A DNA stretch of 64,000 nt from positions 62,001 through 126,000 of the forward strand of contig NW_025765122.1 of assembly GCF_003918875.1 (NCBI RefSeq), in the 5' to 3' direction. The DNA comes from Haliotis rubra. Its lineage: Eukaryota. Of this stretch, positions 3,601-11,994 are shown in pieces. A program made the position numbers and the translations under genes. The notes under the pieces were generated by a model, which saw only the letters and a program-made list of their open reading frames with translations, was not told the DNA's origin and did not search any database. The number at the start of each line of letters is the position of its first letter. Positions within the stretch are counted from its first letter, which is position 1.

Positions 3601-6600
3601 GCTTTATTAGGGATAGTTTATGACATGCTGTAAGATAACATTTATAATGCGCTGGAAGTGCTATGATACAGAAAAATACTCAATTATCTCTTATGATCAT
3701 TATGAGTTTTCATAATGTTAAAAAAATTGGCATTCTGAACGCACCGTCAACATTTCTTTGAATACATTCCTTAACCAACCTGAAACGCCTATTACCTTTT
3801 ATGATGGAATTACCCTGGCTGTTGATACTTTTGGTCGGGTCCTAAAATTCCATACACAAACAGATATCTCATTTATCACATCCCTTATCGTATTCTCCCA
3901 GTTTCACGCTTAAATTGCGTCTACCATGAGAATTCAAATCCTCTATAGAGGAGTGGCAGATCTGAGATGTGGGGCGAACATCAGAATTTGAATACCCTTC
4001 CGTCATTTAAAAATGCTCTAAATTTGGAGGAATAAAAACAGGTTAGAATTTTGAATTGGAGGGCGTATCAAATTATTGTTTTAAGATTATCTGAAAGTCT
4101 CTGCTTAAAACGGCGACAGCGAAATATCCAATGCAATGCCACGGATCCCGACACCGTGATCCCGTATAGTCAAAACCATATTCTAAATAAAATATTTTGA
4201 TACAGCCCGCGAAAGCCGCCAACATCTCGGAGTGACATAGCAAATGTTTTGGTAAAACAATAGTGGTACAATAGGTGATAACGTAGTATTTAATTTCACG
4301 GTCGGCAATTTGGGGATAAAGTCTCAGTCACAATCAAGCGCCACAATTATTACAGTGTAGACTTTTGTTCGTCCTCGGCGGAAATATTTTACCGATGAGA
4401 GCTTCGGTTCATCGATCTCCACGATGCTACAACATGGTACCCCAAATCTCAGGACCCATAACATGCATACAGAAAATATGTCAAAAATCTTAAACGTCTT
4501 TGCTTACCTGATTTCCATCTTTTTTGAAAACAATTTCCAGAAATGATGCCGCTTTGTTAGCTTGTTTCGATGTTTTGTATGTGGCGTATGCCCTTTCGGA
4601 TTGTAATCGGGAAGGGAAAATAAAGATATTCCCAATCTATCTGGTTTCTTCTGGGCATACCTGAAACCAGATGACCGTATGGATGCAATCAATCGCCGGG
4701 ATTATTGGTTAGGCTGTCAATATAAATGACCTGCACGGCGATCGTCATCCATAATGCGGTCAGCACGATGGTTTAGCCGAGTTTGTTTAACGCCGCACTC
4801 AGTGAATGAATTCCGCTTATAAGGTAGTGGTTCAGAACAATTTTTCCGGAACCGTATACCTGCGACTAAATGCAGTTTAGTTAATGGATCTCTTACGCAC
4901 GGGGATATTTAATATGCAAGCAATCAAGTCAGCGCCGGAGTCGACCAATTCTGATCCCGTTAGTCGCCCTCTATGACAACAAGCATAGGCCGCCGAACGA
5001 ATATTCTAACCTGACCTTCACTTCTGGTCCTACCCAATGCATATGCTTAGCGAATGATTGCTTTTGCGATGGATTTTGGAACATGTCCGCGCCGCGTACG
5101 GTCTCTTGTAAAGATAATGATAAATGCTGCCCAAACATATTCTCCACGTCCCATATCAAATAGGCGCTTAAACTCCGTACGATATTCGAAGTCTCATAAC
5201 ACGGCTCTGCGTATAGTGAGCGTTAGTATTAGGGATCGCTAGTAGCTGATCCCATCGCGACGACCGGTAGCGATTTGATTTATGCCGATAGAGAAGCCCG
5301 GCCGTTAAGAAAGTGACCTCATGGGCTGGTGATTTGAGCTCGGTACCAAACCGAATACCGAAATCTTTGGAAAGCTGGTTTTATGGAGGAAGCCGTGGTT
5401 GAGCGAAGAGCGCAGCTCACGGTGGCGGAAAGTATTTCTTGCTCAAACAGTAAAATGTACGGTTCCACGGTATGGCGACGTTCATTACCGGTCACCAGCT
5501 TATTAAAATACGGCGGTTGATCACAGGTGGTGTAGATCATGTGTTCCATGACGGTATGGCGCACGACAGCCCCGTCTATGCTCAACGATATTCTGCCGTC
5601 ATCGTCCTGCCTGTTTCCTAAGGAAAGTCGATCCCGGAAAATAGCGACCTGGCCTGATATTTCCGGCAGTAAAATGCTGGCGAAATGACACTTTGTCGTA
5701 TAAGCTGAATTAACGCGTTGTAACTGTTCGCGGTATGGGTCGATATTATATTTTAAATGATGATTTTACCGGGCCATTGGTCGGAGATGTTCTTCGCGAA
5801 TAGGAAAAGCTGAGAACTCGACCACTCGACCAACTTAGGCTAAGTTATGTAGCTGCTCTGTCAAGATTTTAGGTTCAGTCAATACATACAAACTTAGATA
5901 TTCACAAAAACAATAACTGTTTGGTAGTTCCTCATATCAACAAATCAACTGTACGAGTTGTTGATAAGGTATTGTACGGGTAGTTGGTTTCGTCTAATTT
6001 ATCAACTAGAGGTAGGACCTTGCAGCTGTGTATTGAATGGTATATTCGGTCCAATGTGTCTTTTCTCCCCATCTTTAATCTGCTGAAGTATTTAAAATAT
6101 ATATGTTTTTGTAAAATGAATATTTTATCAGATCTTCTTTACTACACCTTCACTGTATATAGAACATTGGCGCGTACATTTTACCTCACAGAATAATGAA
6201 CGCTGGGGAATTTCAGCAATTCGACGAATCGTGCATCCTCATTTCGCCACAAGCAGCCTGGATTAAGAAGCACACAACCCACCAAAATACCTTCAGCAGA
6301 ATCTAATATGCGAATCAATGCGCGAAGCCTTTGAGTGAGTGGAGTGAAGTTATTTAACGTCACATCGGCAATATTGCAGCCATATCGTGACGAGAACATA
6401 TGAGAAGCTCTTTGAAAGGATCCATTTGGGATTCAGTGGCGCATCACGAGTAACGCATGAAAAGAAATTATATTTCCTTCTGGTTGAAGGATGAATAAGA
6501 AGGAAATTGCTTTTCCAGGGTATGTAACCTGGACAGGGTAGGTGGATGTTGATAGGTGGCGCTGCTATAAGGGTATATAAAGGTAGTGTAAGCCGTGTAC

Positions 6601-6657
6601 GTCATTCTCGCATCACGTGCAGCTACGGTCTGTTGATTTATTTTCAAACCTTGCGCA

Positions 6658-7380
6658 ATGGAGGCTAAGATTGACGCCATTTTGAAGAACTTGAGACAAG
6701 CTTCAGCGAGAGCTTCATGATGCTCTGGATACTCAAGATTTCGGCCCTCTCAGAGAAGAGTTCAGTCAAACCACAACTGACGTTAAGCAGCTTAAGGCGG
6801 ACAAGGACTTATATTTGGTCGAAGGAGGGTAATAAGATTCAGTACAATTTTAATCAAGAGACTATTCAGTGCTTAAATCATGTAATTTCATCTATTCACA
6901 ACAACGATGCTTGAACAGGCAGAGTCCATGATCGTAATTTCGGAATGTGAATCGACTCCAAAACTGAGGAACGAGTCACATCAGGATCGCGACCCTCTGA
7001 AGGCGGTTGGGAGACGGTGAGACAATATGTTTCTAATGAACTCGCTGACAACCTGACGATGATCGGGCTTTTCCAAAGCAACAGCAGAGCTGCCAGGAAA
7101 TTGCGACAAAAGCGGGAAGATACGCGCCGTATGCAAGTAGAGCTGCCTGTAGGAGTTCTCCTACAGTTAGTCGTCCTGCAGCAAGCGGCCAGCGTTTCTA
7201 ACGGCCCTCAGCATTATCCAAAGTCTCGTTAACCAGCCCTTTCGTACCAGAGGTCAGCGTTCAGGGAGCATGCTTCGCCTGTGGCGAGTTTACCCACTTC
7301 CGAAGAGACTGCTTCCCTATACCCAGTGGCGGAAGTCAGGAACGTCAATCGAGTTAGTGCAGGCCAGTCGGGCCAGTGAG
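6658..7380 (+). pseudogene. gag-like ORF of the PAT element (frameshifted)
   Basis: Starts MEAKIDAILKNL just after repeat A1. CCHC knuckle GACFACGEFTHFRRDC at ~7265-7312. Confidence 0.7.
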
Positions 7381-7399
7381 CAGAGGCAGGATTTGTCAT

Positions 7400-9460
7400 C
7401 AGTTGCATATACTCTTTCAAGAATGTTTAAATGCTGTCGAGAATATTTATACTTGAAAGCCTTTACTCGAAAACTATTCTTGAATATGAAATAGGAATGT
7501 CGGAGGATTTTGGTCAAGGGTCGGCCTTTAAACGCTGTTTACCATTTTTGATATCTATGGGTGCATCTACAATTTGTAATCGATATTATTGAAAATGGAT
7601 ATAAAATCTCTTTTAACCAGACCTCCTGATATGCTTTTCCAGAAACAAACCAGTCGGCAATACAACATGCAAGCTTTTGTGACAAAGCCATTGATGAGCT
7701 GGAAGAAGAAAAATTGATTTGTAATGTGATAAAGCCCCCAAGTGTTGTCGTCAACCCGCTCTCTCTGTATCAAAGTGCAGTCCTCAGGCAAAAAAAAACG
7801 GTTGATTCTTGATTTGTCGAAAGTGAATAACCTATGTTCTCAAAATCTAGTGTGAAATATATGAGGACTGGAAACGGCTTTAGTTTATATATACGTCAGA
7901 ATGACTCATTTGCTACAACTTGATATACATCTCGGCATATCACCATGCTGACATTTTTCCATCCTCATACAGGTTTTCTTTGGTTTTGCTTGTTGTGATA
8001 GTACCGGAATGATACATTTCTACAAATTTTTGGTTTTGCCATTCTGGTTTGACTTCGGCACCGTATGTATTTACTAAGATTACTAGACAGCTTGTAAGGA
8101 AATGGCGGTTAGCAGAAGGTTACAGGATTGTTACTTTTGGACGATGGTATTTTATCAGGAGATTCGAATCTGCATACACTTGCCATAGGTTCTGGGCTGT
8201 CAAAGATGACATTCTTGTTTCTGGTTTTGTACCAAAAGTAGAGAAGTCCTTTGTGGTCTCACAATTTTGAGTGGTTAGGGTTTTAGCATTGACACTACAA
8301 CAATGTCATTGAGTGTGCCTAACAGGAAAATTGACAAGCTTCAGTAATGATACGTCATGTACAGAGTCTTAGCTGGAATCCGGTGCCAGTGAAGAGTGTA
8401 GCCTCTGTTGTAGGCTAAGCAGATCATTTCTATGAAATTGGTGGGTTGGTGGCCCTTGTTCAATTCAATGACTAGGATCTTGAGTATGGATATTATTACT
8501 GCTAGGTCTTGAGCAGTAAAATAAGACTTACTGACAGTAGTAAAGCACCAGTTACAGTTTTGGCTAGATAATGACTGGGCGTTACGTGTCAAGACGTTTG
8601 ATCCAATCAGCAGGTATGAGGAAGCTGTTGTATTCAGATGCGAGTGACACTCGGGTATGGTGGTTATTGTGCGGATGTGGAACAAGGTGGTGTCACATGG
8701 TCAGTGGTCTGATGAAGAGCGTGGTAATAGTTCCAATTTGGCGGAGCTTCAAGCTAAGTGAATATGGTTTTGAAGAGCTTAGCACCAGGTTTGAGACATG
8801 AAAGGGTCAGTGGTTTACTGATAATCAAAATGTAGTTAACATCGTTGAAAAGGTAGCATGAAAACACACCTGCAACCATTGGTGTTGCTACAAGTATTCA
8901 ATATTTGTTTTGGAGTACAATATAGATTTGCGGTAAATCCAGTGGATCCCTCGCAATGAAAAAATGAAGAAGCTGATTTTCAGTCGATTAGTGGACCATG
9001 ACGATTGGGGATTAGTAAAGGTGTGTTTCAGAGTGTTGATAAGAAATGGGGACCACATCAGGTTGATCGATGCTTCATACTACAAATGCTAAGCTGACAA
9101 CGTATAACCTCCCGCCATAGCAAACCCAGGGTGTTCGGCCTGTAGATTGTCTCCACCGTGAGCTGGAGAGAGGAGTCATGAACTGGGTTGTCCCCCCGTG
9201 TGTTTGATACAACCCAGAGTTATTGACACAATACGTCTGAATGTCACGCTGTAGGCACGCTTGTTGTTCCAGAGTGGAAGTCGTCTGCTTTTGGCCAATA
9301 TTGTGCTCACAGTCCGGTACATATATCACAAGTGAAAGATTGCATATATCTGCCAAGATCAAAAAGAAGCATATGTTGCTAGTAGAATAAGAGGAGGTCT
9401 GTTTGGTGAACATGATTTGCATTTCTTCAACATGCTAGCATTGTTGCTTGATTTTCGTTA
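7400..9460 (+). pseudogene. Reverse transcriptase-RNase H-methyltransferase-like ORF of the PAT element (many indels)
   Basis: Read across frameshifts: VLPFGLTSAPYVFTK (~8032-8080), xLDDG (~8140), LYSDASDTG (~8628), FTDNQNV (~8815), QWIPR (~8940), WGPHQVDR (~9047), NWVVPP (~9180), GTLVVPEWKS (~9254). Confidence 0.85.
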
Positions 9461-9481
9461 ATGTTGATGTACCTGTTACAG

Positions 9482-10495
9482 GTGTGTTTCACGACGTTTA
9501 TCAAGATGAGATTGGTTGTCTCCTTCCCATGTTCGATCTCGCATATGAACTGCCTGATTTAATATCTCATGCAAGAGCTGAGTCCACAACAAAGAAGCTA
9601 TAGTATAGGCTATGCAGCATGGAAAAGGTGGGCGAAGAGTAATAATACGTCTGATGCGCTCCCCTATATCTCCTTTGCATTGTGCAATTTATTTATTGTC
9701 TATTGTGCAAGAAAGTGATTCAGCATCGCCTGGTTTTAAATGCTTATTATGTGGGTTGAGACATGCTCATTGCAGTGTTACTTCGTTAGTCCTACAGAGA
9801 ATGGCTTAGCTAAAACGCTGTAGAAGCTGCAAAGAGAAAAATTGCCTCGAAAAGTAGATAAGAAAGAACCAGTTACAGTGTCTGTTTAGAGCAGTTGTAT
9901 TGATGTAAAGGGTCATAGTGATTCCTCTAATGGATTTGAGAATATTAGCTATTTGTTTGTTTGGGTATGCGGGATTTCTTAGATCTGCTGAGTTATTGAA
10001 TATCACTCGAGCTGATATTGTATTTTGCCAGTCTCACATGATGCTGCTTTTATTGAGAAATCTAAAACAGATATCTACAGGATGGTGCCTGGCTGGTTAT
10101 TGGTCGGACAGGTACAAAGTTGTGTCCTGTAAGTTGTCTAGGAAAGGTATTTGGTTCAAGCCAATATTGATCCATATTCTGACTGTTTTGTCTTCAGAAA
10201 TTTATCTAAATGTGCCAGTGGCTATAGACTAGGGAAGGTTAATACGCCTATGTCATATAGTAGGCTGAGGGAAATATTTTAGAAGCTTTCAGTCCTTTTG
10301 TTGATAACATTAAGAAATATGGACTGCACAGCCTGCGTAGTGGTGGAGCTACCGCAGCAGCTAACAACAATGGAATTCCAGATCGGATGTTTAAGAGACA
10401 TGGACGCTGGCGAAGTGAGAAAGCTTTAAAGATGGATACATCAAGGATAGTTTAGAAAAACAGGCTAAAAGGTTCCCTCTCTCCTCGGCTCTGAC
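9482..10495 (+). pseudogene. Tyrosine recombinase ORF of the PAT element (frameshifted)
   Basis: FGYAGFLRSAELL (catalytic R), GLHSLRSGGATAAAN (~10321; HxxR), FKRHGRWRSE and KDGYI (catalytic Y, ~10430). Confidence 0.88.
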
Positions 10496-10875
10496 TCTCT
10501 TTGTTTTCTCGGCCGTGAAGCGTACAGCGAGCCCTGTGTTGATACAATGTGTTGTGTCTGTTTGTTAGAGTGGAATGTTGGGGCTGGAGAAATTATATTT
10601 CCCTTCGGCTGAAGCTGATTTGAATAAGAAGGAAATTGCTTTCTCCAGGGAATACATGTAACTCTGGACAGGGTAGGTGTGGATGTTGATAGGTGGCGCT
10701 GCTATAAGGGTATATAAAGGTAGTGTAAGCCGTGTACGTCATTCTCGCATCACGTGCAGCTACGGTCTGTTGATTTATTTATTGTTTTAACTTACAACTT
10801 TTATAAATCTGTAACATTTATATATATATGTATGAATGATATAATTTCCTGTGTTTCAGGGGTATGTTTCCTGCT

Positions 10876-11306
10876 GGCTGAAGAGCCGCGAGAATACTTG
10901 GTTCTCTACATTGTAAATAAGTGTGAATAGAATCTTGACAAGAATTATACAGACGGTGGTTTGTATTGGTGCTGAAGAGCCGTTATAATACTGCATGCAT
11001 GCAATTTATGTGTTTGTGCTCGCTAAGAGCTGAAGAGCTGTTATGATATCTTAAGATTGAATGAAATAAATGTGGAATTTTGGTTGAGGAGCCATTATAA
11101 TACCGTGTTGATAATGAATGGATGTTATGTCCTAGCTGGAGATAAGAGCCGTTCTATCATGTGTTTTCAGCGCTGAAAAGCCGCTGTGATAACTGCGTGT
11201 TCAGATTGAATTAACTCGGTTGTATTCCGGGCTGAAGAGCCGTTATAATACTCATGTTGGGATTGAACGACTTGTGTAATATGGGCTGAAGAGCCGTTAT
11301 AATACT
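10876..11306 (+). repeat. Array of ~8 conserved 22-nt motifs (GCTGAAGAGCCGTTATAATACT) with diverged spacers, inside the PAT element
   Basis: Motif starts at ~10877, 10971, 11029, 11083, ~11141, 11172, 11231 and 11285. Most periods are 54-59 nt. Confidence 0.8.
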
Positions 11307-11679
11307 GTTATAATAACGATGGATTGAGGTTGAGATTGTATTTAATGTACATATTTGTGCTTTTACACAGTTACTGTAAACCCTCCAGTCATGTGCTGCT
11401 GCATCGTTGAGGGGAACACGGTTCCAGAGTTTTTCTTTAAAAAGTTTATCTCTGGTTTTTACGTGTCGGGCTTCGGCATGGTGTAATCTGTGACTTTGTC
11501 ATGCGTGGTATATGCGTGGTGTAAATAAGTATCTTACAGGTAAACTACAATGGGATGATGATGATGACTATGATGATGGTGGTTAATGTAATAAATCTCG
11601 GCCGTGGCATACACAGCGAGCCCTGTGTTGATACAATGTGTTGTGTCGTTTGTTAGAGTGGAATGTTGGGGCTGGAGAA

Positions 11680-11994
11680 GTTAACCAGCTGTGGAACTAC
11701 AAAAGCCACATACATAGGCATCACGATTTGAAACGTGAGCAATGCACTTGGTGCAATGCCAAATATGGAAATAGAAAGGATCTCCATCTTCACCAAAAAT
11801 TATGTGAGAGTAAAGCTGGTAACAAGGGAGAAAGTCATGTTGAATGTCCTACTTGCAAAGTCACAGTTTCCAAATTATATCTGAAAGAGTATATCGAAAG
11901 TCAACACAAGATGATGAAGTTTCATTGTTCCCAATGTTATAAAACTTACAAATGGCGCTCATCTCTGAAATGGCACACTGATCACGCACATTGA
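11680..11994 (+). pseudogene. C2H2 zinc-finger gene, 3' part (5' part probably ~6200-6462, interrupted by the PAT element)
   Basis: Tandem fingers CTWC..HQKLC, CPTC..YIESQH and CSQCYKTYKWRSSLKWHTDHAH*. The N-terminus of the listed ORF (11638-11679) is repeat B2, not ZnF. Confidence 0.7.

What the first reader, a model, noticed from the sequence alone, without database searches (positions are those of the whole stretch)
10876..11306. Repeat-spacer array of conserved hairpin motifs carried inside a YR retrotransposon
Between repeats A2 and B2, in a non-coding part of the element, about 8 copies of a 22-nt motif GCTGAAGAGCCGTTATAATACT recur, mostly every 54-59 nt. Three copies are exact (10971, 11231, 11285). 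The 31-37-nt spacers are much more diverged than the motif. With a preceding G the motif can fold as GGCT-GAAG-AGCC, a tetraloop hairpin. The array lies directly downstream of A2, which contains a TATA box (GTATATAAAG, ~10710), so it could be a separate transcript. The geometry is CRISPR-like, but no cas gene is present and the spacers share traces (GATTGAA, TGTG), suggesting an old tandem amplification in which only the core is constrained. Possible roles (inference): Gag or YR binding array, packaging signal, or processed small-RNA precursor.
Basis: partly seen in the sequence, partly recalled or inferred. Interest (0 to 1): 0.8.

Follow-up and report, generated by a model that had tools for sequence, protein, structure and literature searches.

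The report
Conserved stem-loop motif array in retrotransposon tail
A jumping gene of abalone carries, in its untranslated tail, a row of repeats that all keep one 23-letter signal while everything between the copies changes, which marks the signal as a probable docking site the element needs, though what binds it is not shown.

Summary
Window 10877-11306 carries 8 same-strand copies of the 22-nt motif: 3 exact, 4 with 3-6 mismatches, 1 weak. None is expected by chance.

The host is an abalone, Haliotis rubra. The array lies between A2 and B2 of a decayed tyrosine-recombinase (YR) retrotransposon with split direct repeats. An AATAAA sits just before B2, so the array falls in the predicted 3' UTR.

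The same ordered units occur in all family copies seen. At least six sister families, whose YR genes are only 67-75% identical in DNA, and one H. cracherodii element keep the motif. It reads GGCT-Gnnn-AGCC-n-TTATAATAC and sits in arrays with unrelated spacers and periods of 50, 53, 71, 73 nt or more.

The motif is therefore constrained while the tandem units turn over. Units also expand like any minisatellite, to more than 20 in one dead copy.

Evidence for the hairpin is thin: two compensatory events, recurrent G.U pairs, a free loop, and folding energies like those of shuffled sequence.

It is not CRISPR-like and matches no Rfam family. The recombinase model is Cre-like with no arm-binding domain. 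ORF1 has a CCHC zinc knuckle.

My best guess, unproven, is a multimerised RNA recognition or packaging site. A second conserved element, a ~110-nt structured block, follows at 11365-11478.

The parts
6463..6643 (+). A1, left terminal repeat. It starts with a long imperfect palindrome and carries a copy of the TATA-like GTATATAAAG.
   Evidence: 92% match to A2 over 194 nt, with a 100% identical core at 6542-6643. Inverted repeats at 6459-6515.
6644..10506 (+). Decayed coding region. No frame stays open beyond 115 aa. An RT-like remnant lies at 8049-8270 and a YR-like remnant at 9918-10232.
   Evidence: Intact relatives encode a Gag-like ORF1, RT/RNase H and YR.
10507..10595 (+). B1, internal copy of the right terminal repeat, abutting A2.
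   Evidence: 92% match to B2 over 91 nt.
10588..10780 (+). A2, internal copy of the left repeat, with GTATATAAAG at 10709-10718. The B1|A2 junction palindrome CTGGAGAAA / TTTCTCCAG lies at 10584-10648.
10877..10898 (+). Motif unit 1 (3 mismatches, CGAG in place of TTAT). It is positionally conserved as the first unit in the 53-nt and 73-nt families.
10971..10992 (+). Motif unit 2, exact.
11029..11050 (+). Motif unit 3 (4 mismatches). The closing pair is changed from G:C to A:U.
11083..11104 (+). Motif unit 4 (4 mismatches). Stem C>T gives a G.U pair, and the loop is GAGG.
11140..11161 (+). Motif unit 5, weak (9 mismatches). Only the AGCCGTT core is left.
11172..11193 (+). Motif unit 6 (6 mismatches), loop GAAA.
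11231..11252 (+). Motif unit 7, exact. This is the 53-54-nt unit type that is expanded in other copies.
11285..11306 (+). Motif unit 8, exact.
11365..11478 (+). Second conserved non-coding element, a ~110-nt block. Predicted stems are CCCUC/GAGGG, CACG/CGUG and CCAGAG/CUCUGG around a variable internal loop.
   Evidence: 82-90% identity between families, including H. cracherodii. Consensus fold.
11590..11595 (+). AATAAA poly(A) signal directly before B2. It is present 2-10 nt before B2 in all five families examined, and the 60 nt printed upstream of B1 hold none.
11596..11683 (+). B2, right terminal repeat. The element ends near 11678-11683.

Best explanation
The array is a tandem repeat in the 3' untranslated tail (the A2-B2 interval) of a split-direct-repeat YR retrotransposon of abalone. 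Each unit carries a 23-nt cis-element: a possible 4-5-bp stem (G)GCU/AGC(C), a loop Gnnn whose last three bases are free, then nUUAUAAUAC. Units are gained, lost and homogenised by slippage or unequal exchange, so spacers and period differ between families. Lineages that stay active keep several intact copies of the motif, which points to selection on the motif (shown by comparison). I infer that the motif works in the sense-strand RNA as a multimerised docking site. The most likely partner is the element's own Gag-like ORF1, which has a retrovirus-type CCHC zinc knuckle, and the likely role is marking the genomic RNA for particle assembly or reverse transcription. The neighbouring ~110-nt block would be a second cis-signal. 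I put the motif being a selected cis-element at about 0.75-0.8. I put the specific RNA/Gag-docking mechanism at about 0.3-0.35.
For: The motif is non-random and confined to arrays: 181 hits against 0 in the control, and 259 hits to GGCYnnnnRGCCnTTATAATAC against 0. All 20 further loci have arrays on one strand only. Where reading frames survive, the arrays lie about 0.4-0.5 kb after the YR stop on the ORF strand, between A2 and B2. Coordinates of six more loci give the same order, YR then array then block. The 53-, 71- and 73-nt families share the identical 22-mer but have unrelated spacers. Their YR ORFs are 67-75% identical in DNA, and the A2-B2 interval aligns only at the motif and the block. 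Further families differ only in the loop: GTCG, GGCA, GCAG, GCAA, GGGA, GGTA. An H. cracherodii element has a 73-nt array at the same place, with the stem pair changed on both sides from T:A to C:G. In pair counts 89% of cells are paired against 26-60% for slid partners, 2 of 4 pairs show double changes, and C>U wobble is the commonest stem change. AATAAA lies directly before B2 in five families, which places the array in the predicted 3' UTR. ORF1 has CX2CX4HX4C in five of seven ORF1 sequences read, from four families (L036, L041, L042, L046, L050); L031 has R in place of H and the decayed L045 lacks the first Cys. Established knowledge: retroviral NC knuckles bind unpaired G in stem-loop tetraloops such as GGAG and GGUG of HIV-1 psi.
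Against: The stem is only 4-5 bp. Units fold no better than shuffled sequence (z near 0 in 11 of 12), and an extended stem is not consistent. There are only two independent compensatory events. By my own count of independent events in the rows (not a tool tally), about 10 transitions give a wobble pair and about 6 give a mismatch, which is not significant. High primary-sequence conservation of both stem and tail fits a sequence-specific site on DNA as well as on RNA. No binding, packaging or expression data exist. The only RNA-like evidence is contigs from runs whose RNA label is a guess. Within the family, motif columns vary only slightly less than spacers (17% against 26%, p=0.048). Several units of the window array are degenerate. 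Cross-species support is one locus, and more distant relatives lack the motif.
Confidence: 0.35

Rival explanations
1. It is an ordinary TE-borne minisatellite with no role for the element. The motif persists through molecular drive: only units that contain it are prone to duplication (for example polymerase or RT pausing or slippage at the GC clamp plus AT tail), so arrays always regrow from motif-bearing units.
For: Arrays behave like minisatellites. There are 2 copies of the 53-nt unit in the window, 6 in C1446 and more than 20 in the dead copy C2534, and 32 units in C2083. Young arrays are homogeneous over the whole unit (spacer identity 0.86). Tandem repeats at this position, with other sequences, occur in a distant relative (L051). 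Plant Tat/Ogre LTR elements have 3'-UTR tandem repeats that are thought to arise by aberrant strand transfer (PMC7004042).
Against: Drive does not explain 18 or more invariant positions across at least six families whose coding DNA differs by 25-33%. It also does not explain why only three loop bases and position 12 are free, or why diverged units are stably inherited in fixed order.
Confidence: 0.2
2. It is a DNA-level protein-binding array: either accessory (arm-type) sites for the element's recombinase beside the circle junction, or enhancer-like transcription-factor sites next to the A promoter. GGCT/AGCC would be a small palindromic half-site pair and TTATAATAC a second site.
For: There is strong primary-sequence conservation with a free 3-nt centre between inverted 4-mers. 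In a circular form the array would lie 0.4-0.8 kb upstream of the B2|A1 junction and the A promoter. Repeated recombinase or transposase sites near element ends are common (established knowledge: lambda attP arms, TnpI accessory repeats, Ac/En subterminal motifs).
Against: The predicted YR is Cre-like over about 300 of 344 residues (TM 0.69-0.75), with an all-helical N-terminus and no lambda-Int-type beta arm-binding domain. Cre-type enzymes need no accessory sites. Periods of 50, 53, 71 and 73 nt give no constant helical phase. C>T changes that keep G.U pairing are the commonest stem variant.
Confidence: 0.2
3. It is a separate short non-coding transcript started at the A2 TATA box (A2 part, array, block, B2 part, about 0.9 kb). 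This RNA would be processed into small RNAs or act as a built-in non-autonomous RNA or decoy.
For: A2 is a full copy of A including the TATA-like box. AATAAA lies just before B2. Probable RNA-seq contigs of related copies cover the array and stop about 30 nt after AATAAA.
Against: No start-site or small-RNA data exist. The contigs come from runs whose RNA label is a guess, and one continues into unrelated upstream sequence. The units have no miRNA-like long hairpin. Nothing matched in Rfam.
Confidence: 0.1
4. It is a CRISPR-like repeat-spacer memory array.
Against: The genome is eukaryotic, inferred from a matching contig length and source name. The array lies inside a retrotransposon. Spacers are homologous to each other and are amplified together with the repeat. 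No cas genes are present.
Confidence: 0.01

Closest known systems
Hypervariable tandem repeats in the 3' UTR of plant Tat/Ogre LTR retrotransposons (Macas et al. 2009, as cited in PMC7004042)
   Same: Short tandem arrays lie between the last ORF and the terminal repeat. Monomer length and sequence differ between families, and arrays can expand into satellite-like runs.
   Different: Here one 23-nt core is kept unchanged across families while the rest of the monomer is replaced. The host element is a YR (DIRS-order) retrotransposon of a mollusc, not an LTR element.
Retroviral packaging stem-loops bound by CCHC nucleocapsid knuckles (HIV-1 psi SL2/SL3)
   Same: Short stem-loops with G-rich tetraloops, and an element-encoded Gag with a CX2CX4HX4C knuckle.
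   Different: The location is the 3' UTR rather than the 5' leader. There are 3-10 direct copies. The conserved single-stranded tail TTATAATAC has no counterpart. Binding was not tested.
Arm-type or accessory recombinase sites (lambda attP, Tn4430 TnpI IRS) and subterminal transposase-binding repeats of DNA transposons
   Same: Direct repeats of a short conserved motif on one side of the recombination site of an element that integrates by a tyrosine recombinase.
   Different: The recombinase model is Cre-like without an arm-binding domain. The sites lie 0.4-0.8 kb from the junction with variable spacing.
Ngaro/PAT-type split-direct-repeat YR retrotransposons (Goodwin & Poulter 2004; the structure A1-[ORFs]-B1A2B2 is quoted in PMC8547959)
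   Same: A1-[ORFs]-B1A2...B2 layout, with Gag-like, RT/RNase H and YR ORFs.
   Different: A2 and B2 are separated by about 0.8-1.2 kb (about 0.8 kb in the window) holding the motif array and a conserved structured block. I found no description of such content in the papers searched.

Membership tests
DIRS-order YR retrotransposon, split-direct-repeat (Ngaro/PAT) type | Encodes reverse transcriptase/RNase H and a tyrosine recombinase | tested here: met
   The intact relative L031 hits RVT_1 (2e-11), RVT_3 (4e-5) and Phage_integrase (1e-8). The window copy keeps only remnants.
DIRS-order YR retrotransposon, split-direct-repeat (Ngaro/PAT) type | Terminal structure A1-[ORFs]-B1A2-...-B2 | tested here: met
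   Found in the window and in L050, L042, L046 and L041; in H. cracherodii L052 only the B1/B2 pair was found.
DIRS-order YR retrotransposon, split-direct-repeat (Ngaro/PAT) type | Methyltransferase-like domain after RNase H (present in PAT/DIRS1, absent in Ngaro) | tested here: inconclusive
   Only a weak Dam hit, E=0.0088 and below the cut-off, at residues 651-725 of ORF2.
CRISPR array | Near-identical repeats separated by unique, unrelated spacers | tested here: not met
   Spacers are homologous and are amplified with the repeat.
CRISPR array | Prokaryotic or viral host with cas genes or a leader | tested here: not met
   The genome is a 1.38-Gb abalone genome, and the array lies inside a retrotransposon.
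Known RNA families (hammerhead and other ribozymes, snoRNA, miRNA and others in Rfam 15) | Match to a covariance model | tested here: not met
   The best E-value is 1.2, far below the gathering score, and no hit lies on the motif.
Lambda-type arm-site system | Recombinase with a separate N-terminal arm-binding domain | tested here: not met
   The AF2 model (pLDDT 87) is all-helical up to residue 182 and superposes on Cre.
Lambda-type arm-site system | Repeated sites flanking the core recombination site | tested here: inconclusive
   Direct repeats lie on one side only, 0.4-0.8 kb from the junction.
Retroviral-type NC-bound packaging stem-loops | Gag with a CCHC zinc knuckle | tested here: met
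   CX2CX4HX4C in the ORF1 of L036, L041, L042, L046 and L050; L031 has R in place of H.
Retroviral-type NC-bound packaging stem-loops | Conserved stem-loop supported by covariation | tested here: inconclusive
   Two compensatory events, a free loop, and energies like those of shuffled sequence.
Retroviral-type NC-bound packaging stem-loops | Specific Gag-RNA binding and a packaging dependence | not testable with these tools
   Needs a binding or packaging experiment.
TE 3'-UTR hypervariable tandem repeats (Ogre/Tat type) | Tandem array between the last ORF and the terminal repeat, with a monomer that varies between families | tested here: met
   Periods of 50, 53, 71, 73 nt and up to 165 nt or more, with unrelated spacers. 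Unlike the plant case, a core motif is invariant.

The most novel reading that the evidence does not exclude
The 23-nt motif would be the RNA address label of a whole clade of abalone YR retrotransposons. It would be a multimerised stem-loop read by the element's CCHC Gag (or RT) and, together with the adjacent ~110-nt block, would define which RNA is packaged and copied. The A2-array-block-B2 segment would then be a self-contained mini-unit that can be transcribed from A2 and ride on the machinery. This would be the first cis-signal defined for replication of split-direct-repeat YR retroelements, whose packaging and priming are, to my knowledge, still undefined.
Probability: 0.25. Interest if true: 0.65.

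Novelty: new variant of a known kind. Interest (0 to 1): 0.5.

Why it matters
YR (DIRS/Ngaro/PAT) retrotransposons are the least understood retroelement order. To my knowledge, their packaging signal, primer and recombination sites have not been defined. This clade offers two sharply delimited, comparatively validated non-coding candidates: the motif array and the 110-nt block. A palindromic junction is a third. All three can be tested directly in vitro. The array also shows how a functional core can ride inside a fast-turning minisatellite and seed satellite-like expansions in mollusc genomes.

Tried and rejected
- **Hammerhead or other known RNA family.** The CUGAAGA core looked hammerhead-like, but Rfam gave nothing, even at E<=10.
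- **Motif as a copy of the B|A circle junction (pseudo-recombination site).** Only the window family has GGGGCTGGAGAA at the end of B. The other motif-bearing families end in AGGAGAA. Rejected.
- **Extended hairpin pairing an upstream GUAU with AUAC of the tail.** It appears in some folds but is not consistent, and the energy is not above shuffles.
- **Primer-binding site complementary to a tRNA 3' end (TGG + motif).** The TGG is not conserved (TAG, TTG, CGG and CTG also occur), and the implied T-loop is not tRNA-like. Rejected by reasoning only, not by a search.
- **miR-8/200 seed resemblance (TAATACTG).** The last base is not conserved between families. Treated as chance.
- **Lambda-type arm binding.** The recombinase model is Cre-like.
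- **More distant relatives.** L051 and L054 (H. cracherodii), L055 (an ENA sample), L056 (Mytilus) and L053 (Patella) lack the motif. Contigs L057 and L058 end at the YR stop.
- **More DNA from the genome.** Later family sampling rests on pattern hits and coordinates only.
- **RNA evidence.** No run is on record as RNA. Contigs from runs guessed to be RNA hold related copies at 93-95% identity. This counts neither for nor against expression.

Full report
**Observation**

The motif GCTGAAGAGCCGTTATAATACT occurs on the + strand at these positions:

| Start | Mismatches |
|---|---|
| 10877 | 3 |
| 10971 | 0 |
| 11029 | 4 |
| 11083 | 4 |
| 11140 | 9 (weak) |
| 11172 | 6 |
| 11231 | 0 |
| 11285 | 0 |

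The spacings are 94, 58, 54, 57, 32, 59 and 54 nt. No shuffle of the window gave a single match at <=3 mismatches. TRF misses the array because the units are too diverged. In a unit alignment the motif columns line up and the spacers share only traces. Mean pairwise identity is 0.74-0.80 for the motif and 0.26-0.34 for the spacers.

**Context**

The window lies in a 1.38-Gb genome. A hit named Haliotis rubra sits on a contig whose length equals that of contig C1990, so the host is most likely the blacklip abalone.

The array sits in a YR retroelement with split direct repeats:
- A1 at 6463-6643
- B1 at 10507-10595
- A2 at 10588-10780
- B2 at 11596-11683

The window copy is dead. No frame between A1 and B1 stays open beyond 115 aa, and only RT-like and YR-like remnants are left.

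An intact relative (L031) encodes three ORFs:
- a 249-aa Gag-like ORF1
- an 800-aa ORF2 with RVT_1, an RNase H-like domain and a weak Dam-like hit
- a 344-aa Phage_integrase ORF3

The layout A1-[ORFs]-B1A2...B2 is the one described for Ngaro-type elements (PMC8547959). In all five families checked, AATAAA lies 2-10 nt before B2, and the 60 nt read upstream of B1 contain none. The array is therefore in the predicted 3' UTR of the full-length RNA.

**Family comparison**

Copies of the window's own family (88-98% identical) carry the same degenerate units in the same order. The array and its diverged units therefore predate the family's spread. Only the last 53-nt unit varies in number: 2 in the window, 6 in C1446 and more than 20 in the decayed copy C2534. 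That is ordinary minisatellite behaviour.

Genome-wide the motif has 181 hits at <=1 mismatch and 0 for the reversed control. They fall in arrays with different periods. In 20 further loci all copies are on one strand. Where frames survive, the arrays start about 0.4-0.5 kb after the YR stop on the ORF strand and lie between A2 and B2.

The key result is that the 53-nt, 71-nt and 73-nt families share the identical 22-mer while their spacers are unrelated. Their YR ORFs are only 67-75% identical in DNA. The A2-B2 interval aligns between families at just two places: the motif (23-25 nt, 100%) and a ~110-nt block (82-90%).

A degenerate pattern, GGCYnnnnRGCCnTTATAATAC, finds 259 sites and 0 in the control. 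It reveals further families that differ only in the loop: GTCG with a 50-nt period, GGCA, GCAG, GCAA, GGGA and GGTA. Coordinates give the same order, YR then array then block, for C169, C1680, C2402 and C418. For C36 and C2117 they give array then block; no adjoining YR hit was listed there.

In Haliotis cracherodii one element (L052) has a 73-nt array at the same place. Its motifs are GGCTGGCGAGCC or GGCCGGCGGGCC followed by TTTATAATACA.

More distant relatives lack the motif: two other H. cracherodii loci, one ENA sample, Mytilus and Patella. One of them (L051) has unrelated tandem arrays at the same position.

The array is not absent from relatives, and spacers do not align as well as motifs.

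**Is it a hairpin?**

The proposed stem pairs position -1 with 11, 1 with 10, 2 with 9 and 3 with 8. It is formed in 89% of cells over 108 distinct instances, against 26-60% when the partners are slid. Two pairs show changes on both sides, each a single event:
- G:C to A:U in unit 3 of the 53-nt family
- T:A to C:G in H. cracherodii

The three loop bases after the first G vary freely between families. C>T changes that keep a G.U pair are the commonest stem variant: 15 of 18 genome-wide variants at that position, from at least three events.

Several results weaken the case:
- Over all pairs I count roughly 10 wobble-making and 6 mismatch-making transition events in the rows, which is not significant.
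- Only three variants at position 3 exist in H. rubra, and none is compensated.
- Units fold no better than shuffled sequence in 11 of 12 cases.

The hairpin is therefore compatible with the data but not demonstrated. What is demonstrated is an 18-19-nt sequence signature kept across lineages whose coding DNA has diverged by a quarter to a third.

**What it is not**

- It matches no Rfam family, although the CUGAAGA core resembles a hammerhead core.
- It is not CRISPR-like. Spacers belong to the tandem unit, and in young arrays they are 86% identical to each other.
- It is not a copy of the circle junction.
- A lambda-type arm-site role is disfavoured. The AF2 model of the recombinase (pLDDT 87) is all-helical before the catalytic domain and superposes on Cre over about 300 residues.

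**Mechanism**

Shown:
- position in the predicted 3' UTR
- sense orientation
- multi-copy state
- turnover of units with retention of the core

Inferred: the motif is a cis-acting docking site. ORF1 of five elements from four families carries a CX2CX4HX4C zinc knuckle. Retroviral NC knuckles are known to grip unpaired G in tetraloops. The loops here always start with G and mostly end in a purine. I therefore favour a multimerised RNA site for the element's own Gag (or RT), at about 0.3-0.35.

The rivals are a DNA-level site for the recombinase or a transcription factor (about 0.2), a drive-maintained minisatellite without function (about 0.2), and a separate A2-started non-coding RNA (about 0.1).

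RNA evidence is inconclusive. Contigs from three small runs, whose RNA label is a guess, hold related copies of the array and stop about 30 nt after AATAAA. Within the family, motif columns vary somewhat less than spacer columns (17% against 26%, p=0.048). That fits a mix of neutral decay and lineage constraint.

**Comparison with what is known**

The nearest described phenomenon is the hypervariable tandem-repeat region in the 3' UTR of plant Tat/Ogre LTR retrotransposons. It also seeds satellites and is thought to arise by aberrant strand transfer (PMC7004042). The difference here is the invariant core and the element class. I found no description of such an array, or of the 110-nt block, in the papers on YR retroelements that I searched. 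That is absence in a limited library, not proof of novelty.

**Limits**

Later family sampling therefore rests on pattern hits and coordinates. Cross-species support is a single locus.

**Verdict**

This is a real, selectively maintained motif carried in a fast-turning tandem array of a mollusc YR retrotransposon. Its function is unproven. It is of moderate interest as a directly testable cis-signal in a poorly understood element class.

Noticed in passing
window 11365-11478: A ~110-nt non-coding block is better conserved between element families (82-90%, including H. cracherodii) than the YR gene is (67-75%). Predicted stems are CCCUC/GAGGG, CACG/CGUG and CCAGAG/CUCUGG around a variable loop, with one compensatory pair. 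It has 30 or more partial matches elsewhere in the genome. It is a likely second cis-signal, for example for RT recognition.
   Followed up: partly
window 10584-10648 and 6459-6515: The B-end/A-start junction and the left end of the element form a long imperfect palindrome (CTGGAGAAA / TTTCTCCAG, and ATTTCCTTCT / AGAAGGAAAT). The sequence ..AGGAGAA|AT.A.ATTTCC.. is conserved in five H. rubra elements and at the B1|A2 junction of H. cracherodii L052. This is a likely core site of the recombinase.
   Followed up: partly
L048 / L007 (G000:C2534:1350600-1352300): In a decayed copy of the same family the 53-nt unit is expanded to more than 20 copies with a higher-order pattern of ACTG...ATGCT and GCTG...ATACT variants. 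C2083 (L033) holds 32 units of the 71-nt type over 3.2 kb. These are TE-borne arrays growing towards satellite DNA.
   Followed up: partly
L051:7326-8680 (H. cracherodii): A more distant YR element has unrelated tandem arrays (33 nt x4 and 31 nt x29) at the same position after the YR gene. Tandem repeats at this place may therefore be a general trait of these mollusc elements.
   Followed up: no
window 11638-11994: A 118-aa open frame with C2H2 zinc-finger-like repeats starts inside B2 and runs into the flank. It is probably part of the host or outer-element sequence into which the retroelement inserted.
   Followed up: no
window 10600-10625: The A2 palindrome loop reads GGCTGAAGCTGATTTGAAT. 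It shares the 8-mer GGCTGAAG and GATTGAA-like words with array units. A1 and the other families have GGTTGAAGGATGAAT instead, so this is probably chance or a local mutation.
   Followed up: partly
L031:6517-7263:- residue 222: ORF1 of the otherwise intact 71-nt-family element L031 has R in place of the knuckle histidine (CX2CX4RX4C). Its close relative L036 has H.
   Followed up: no
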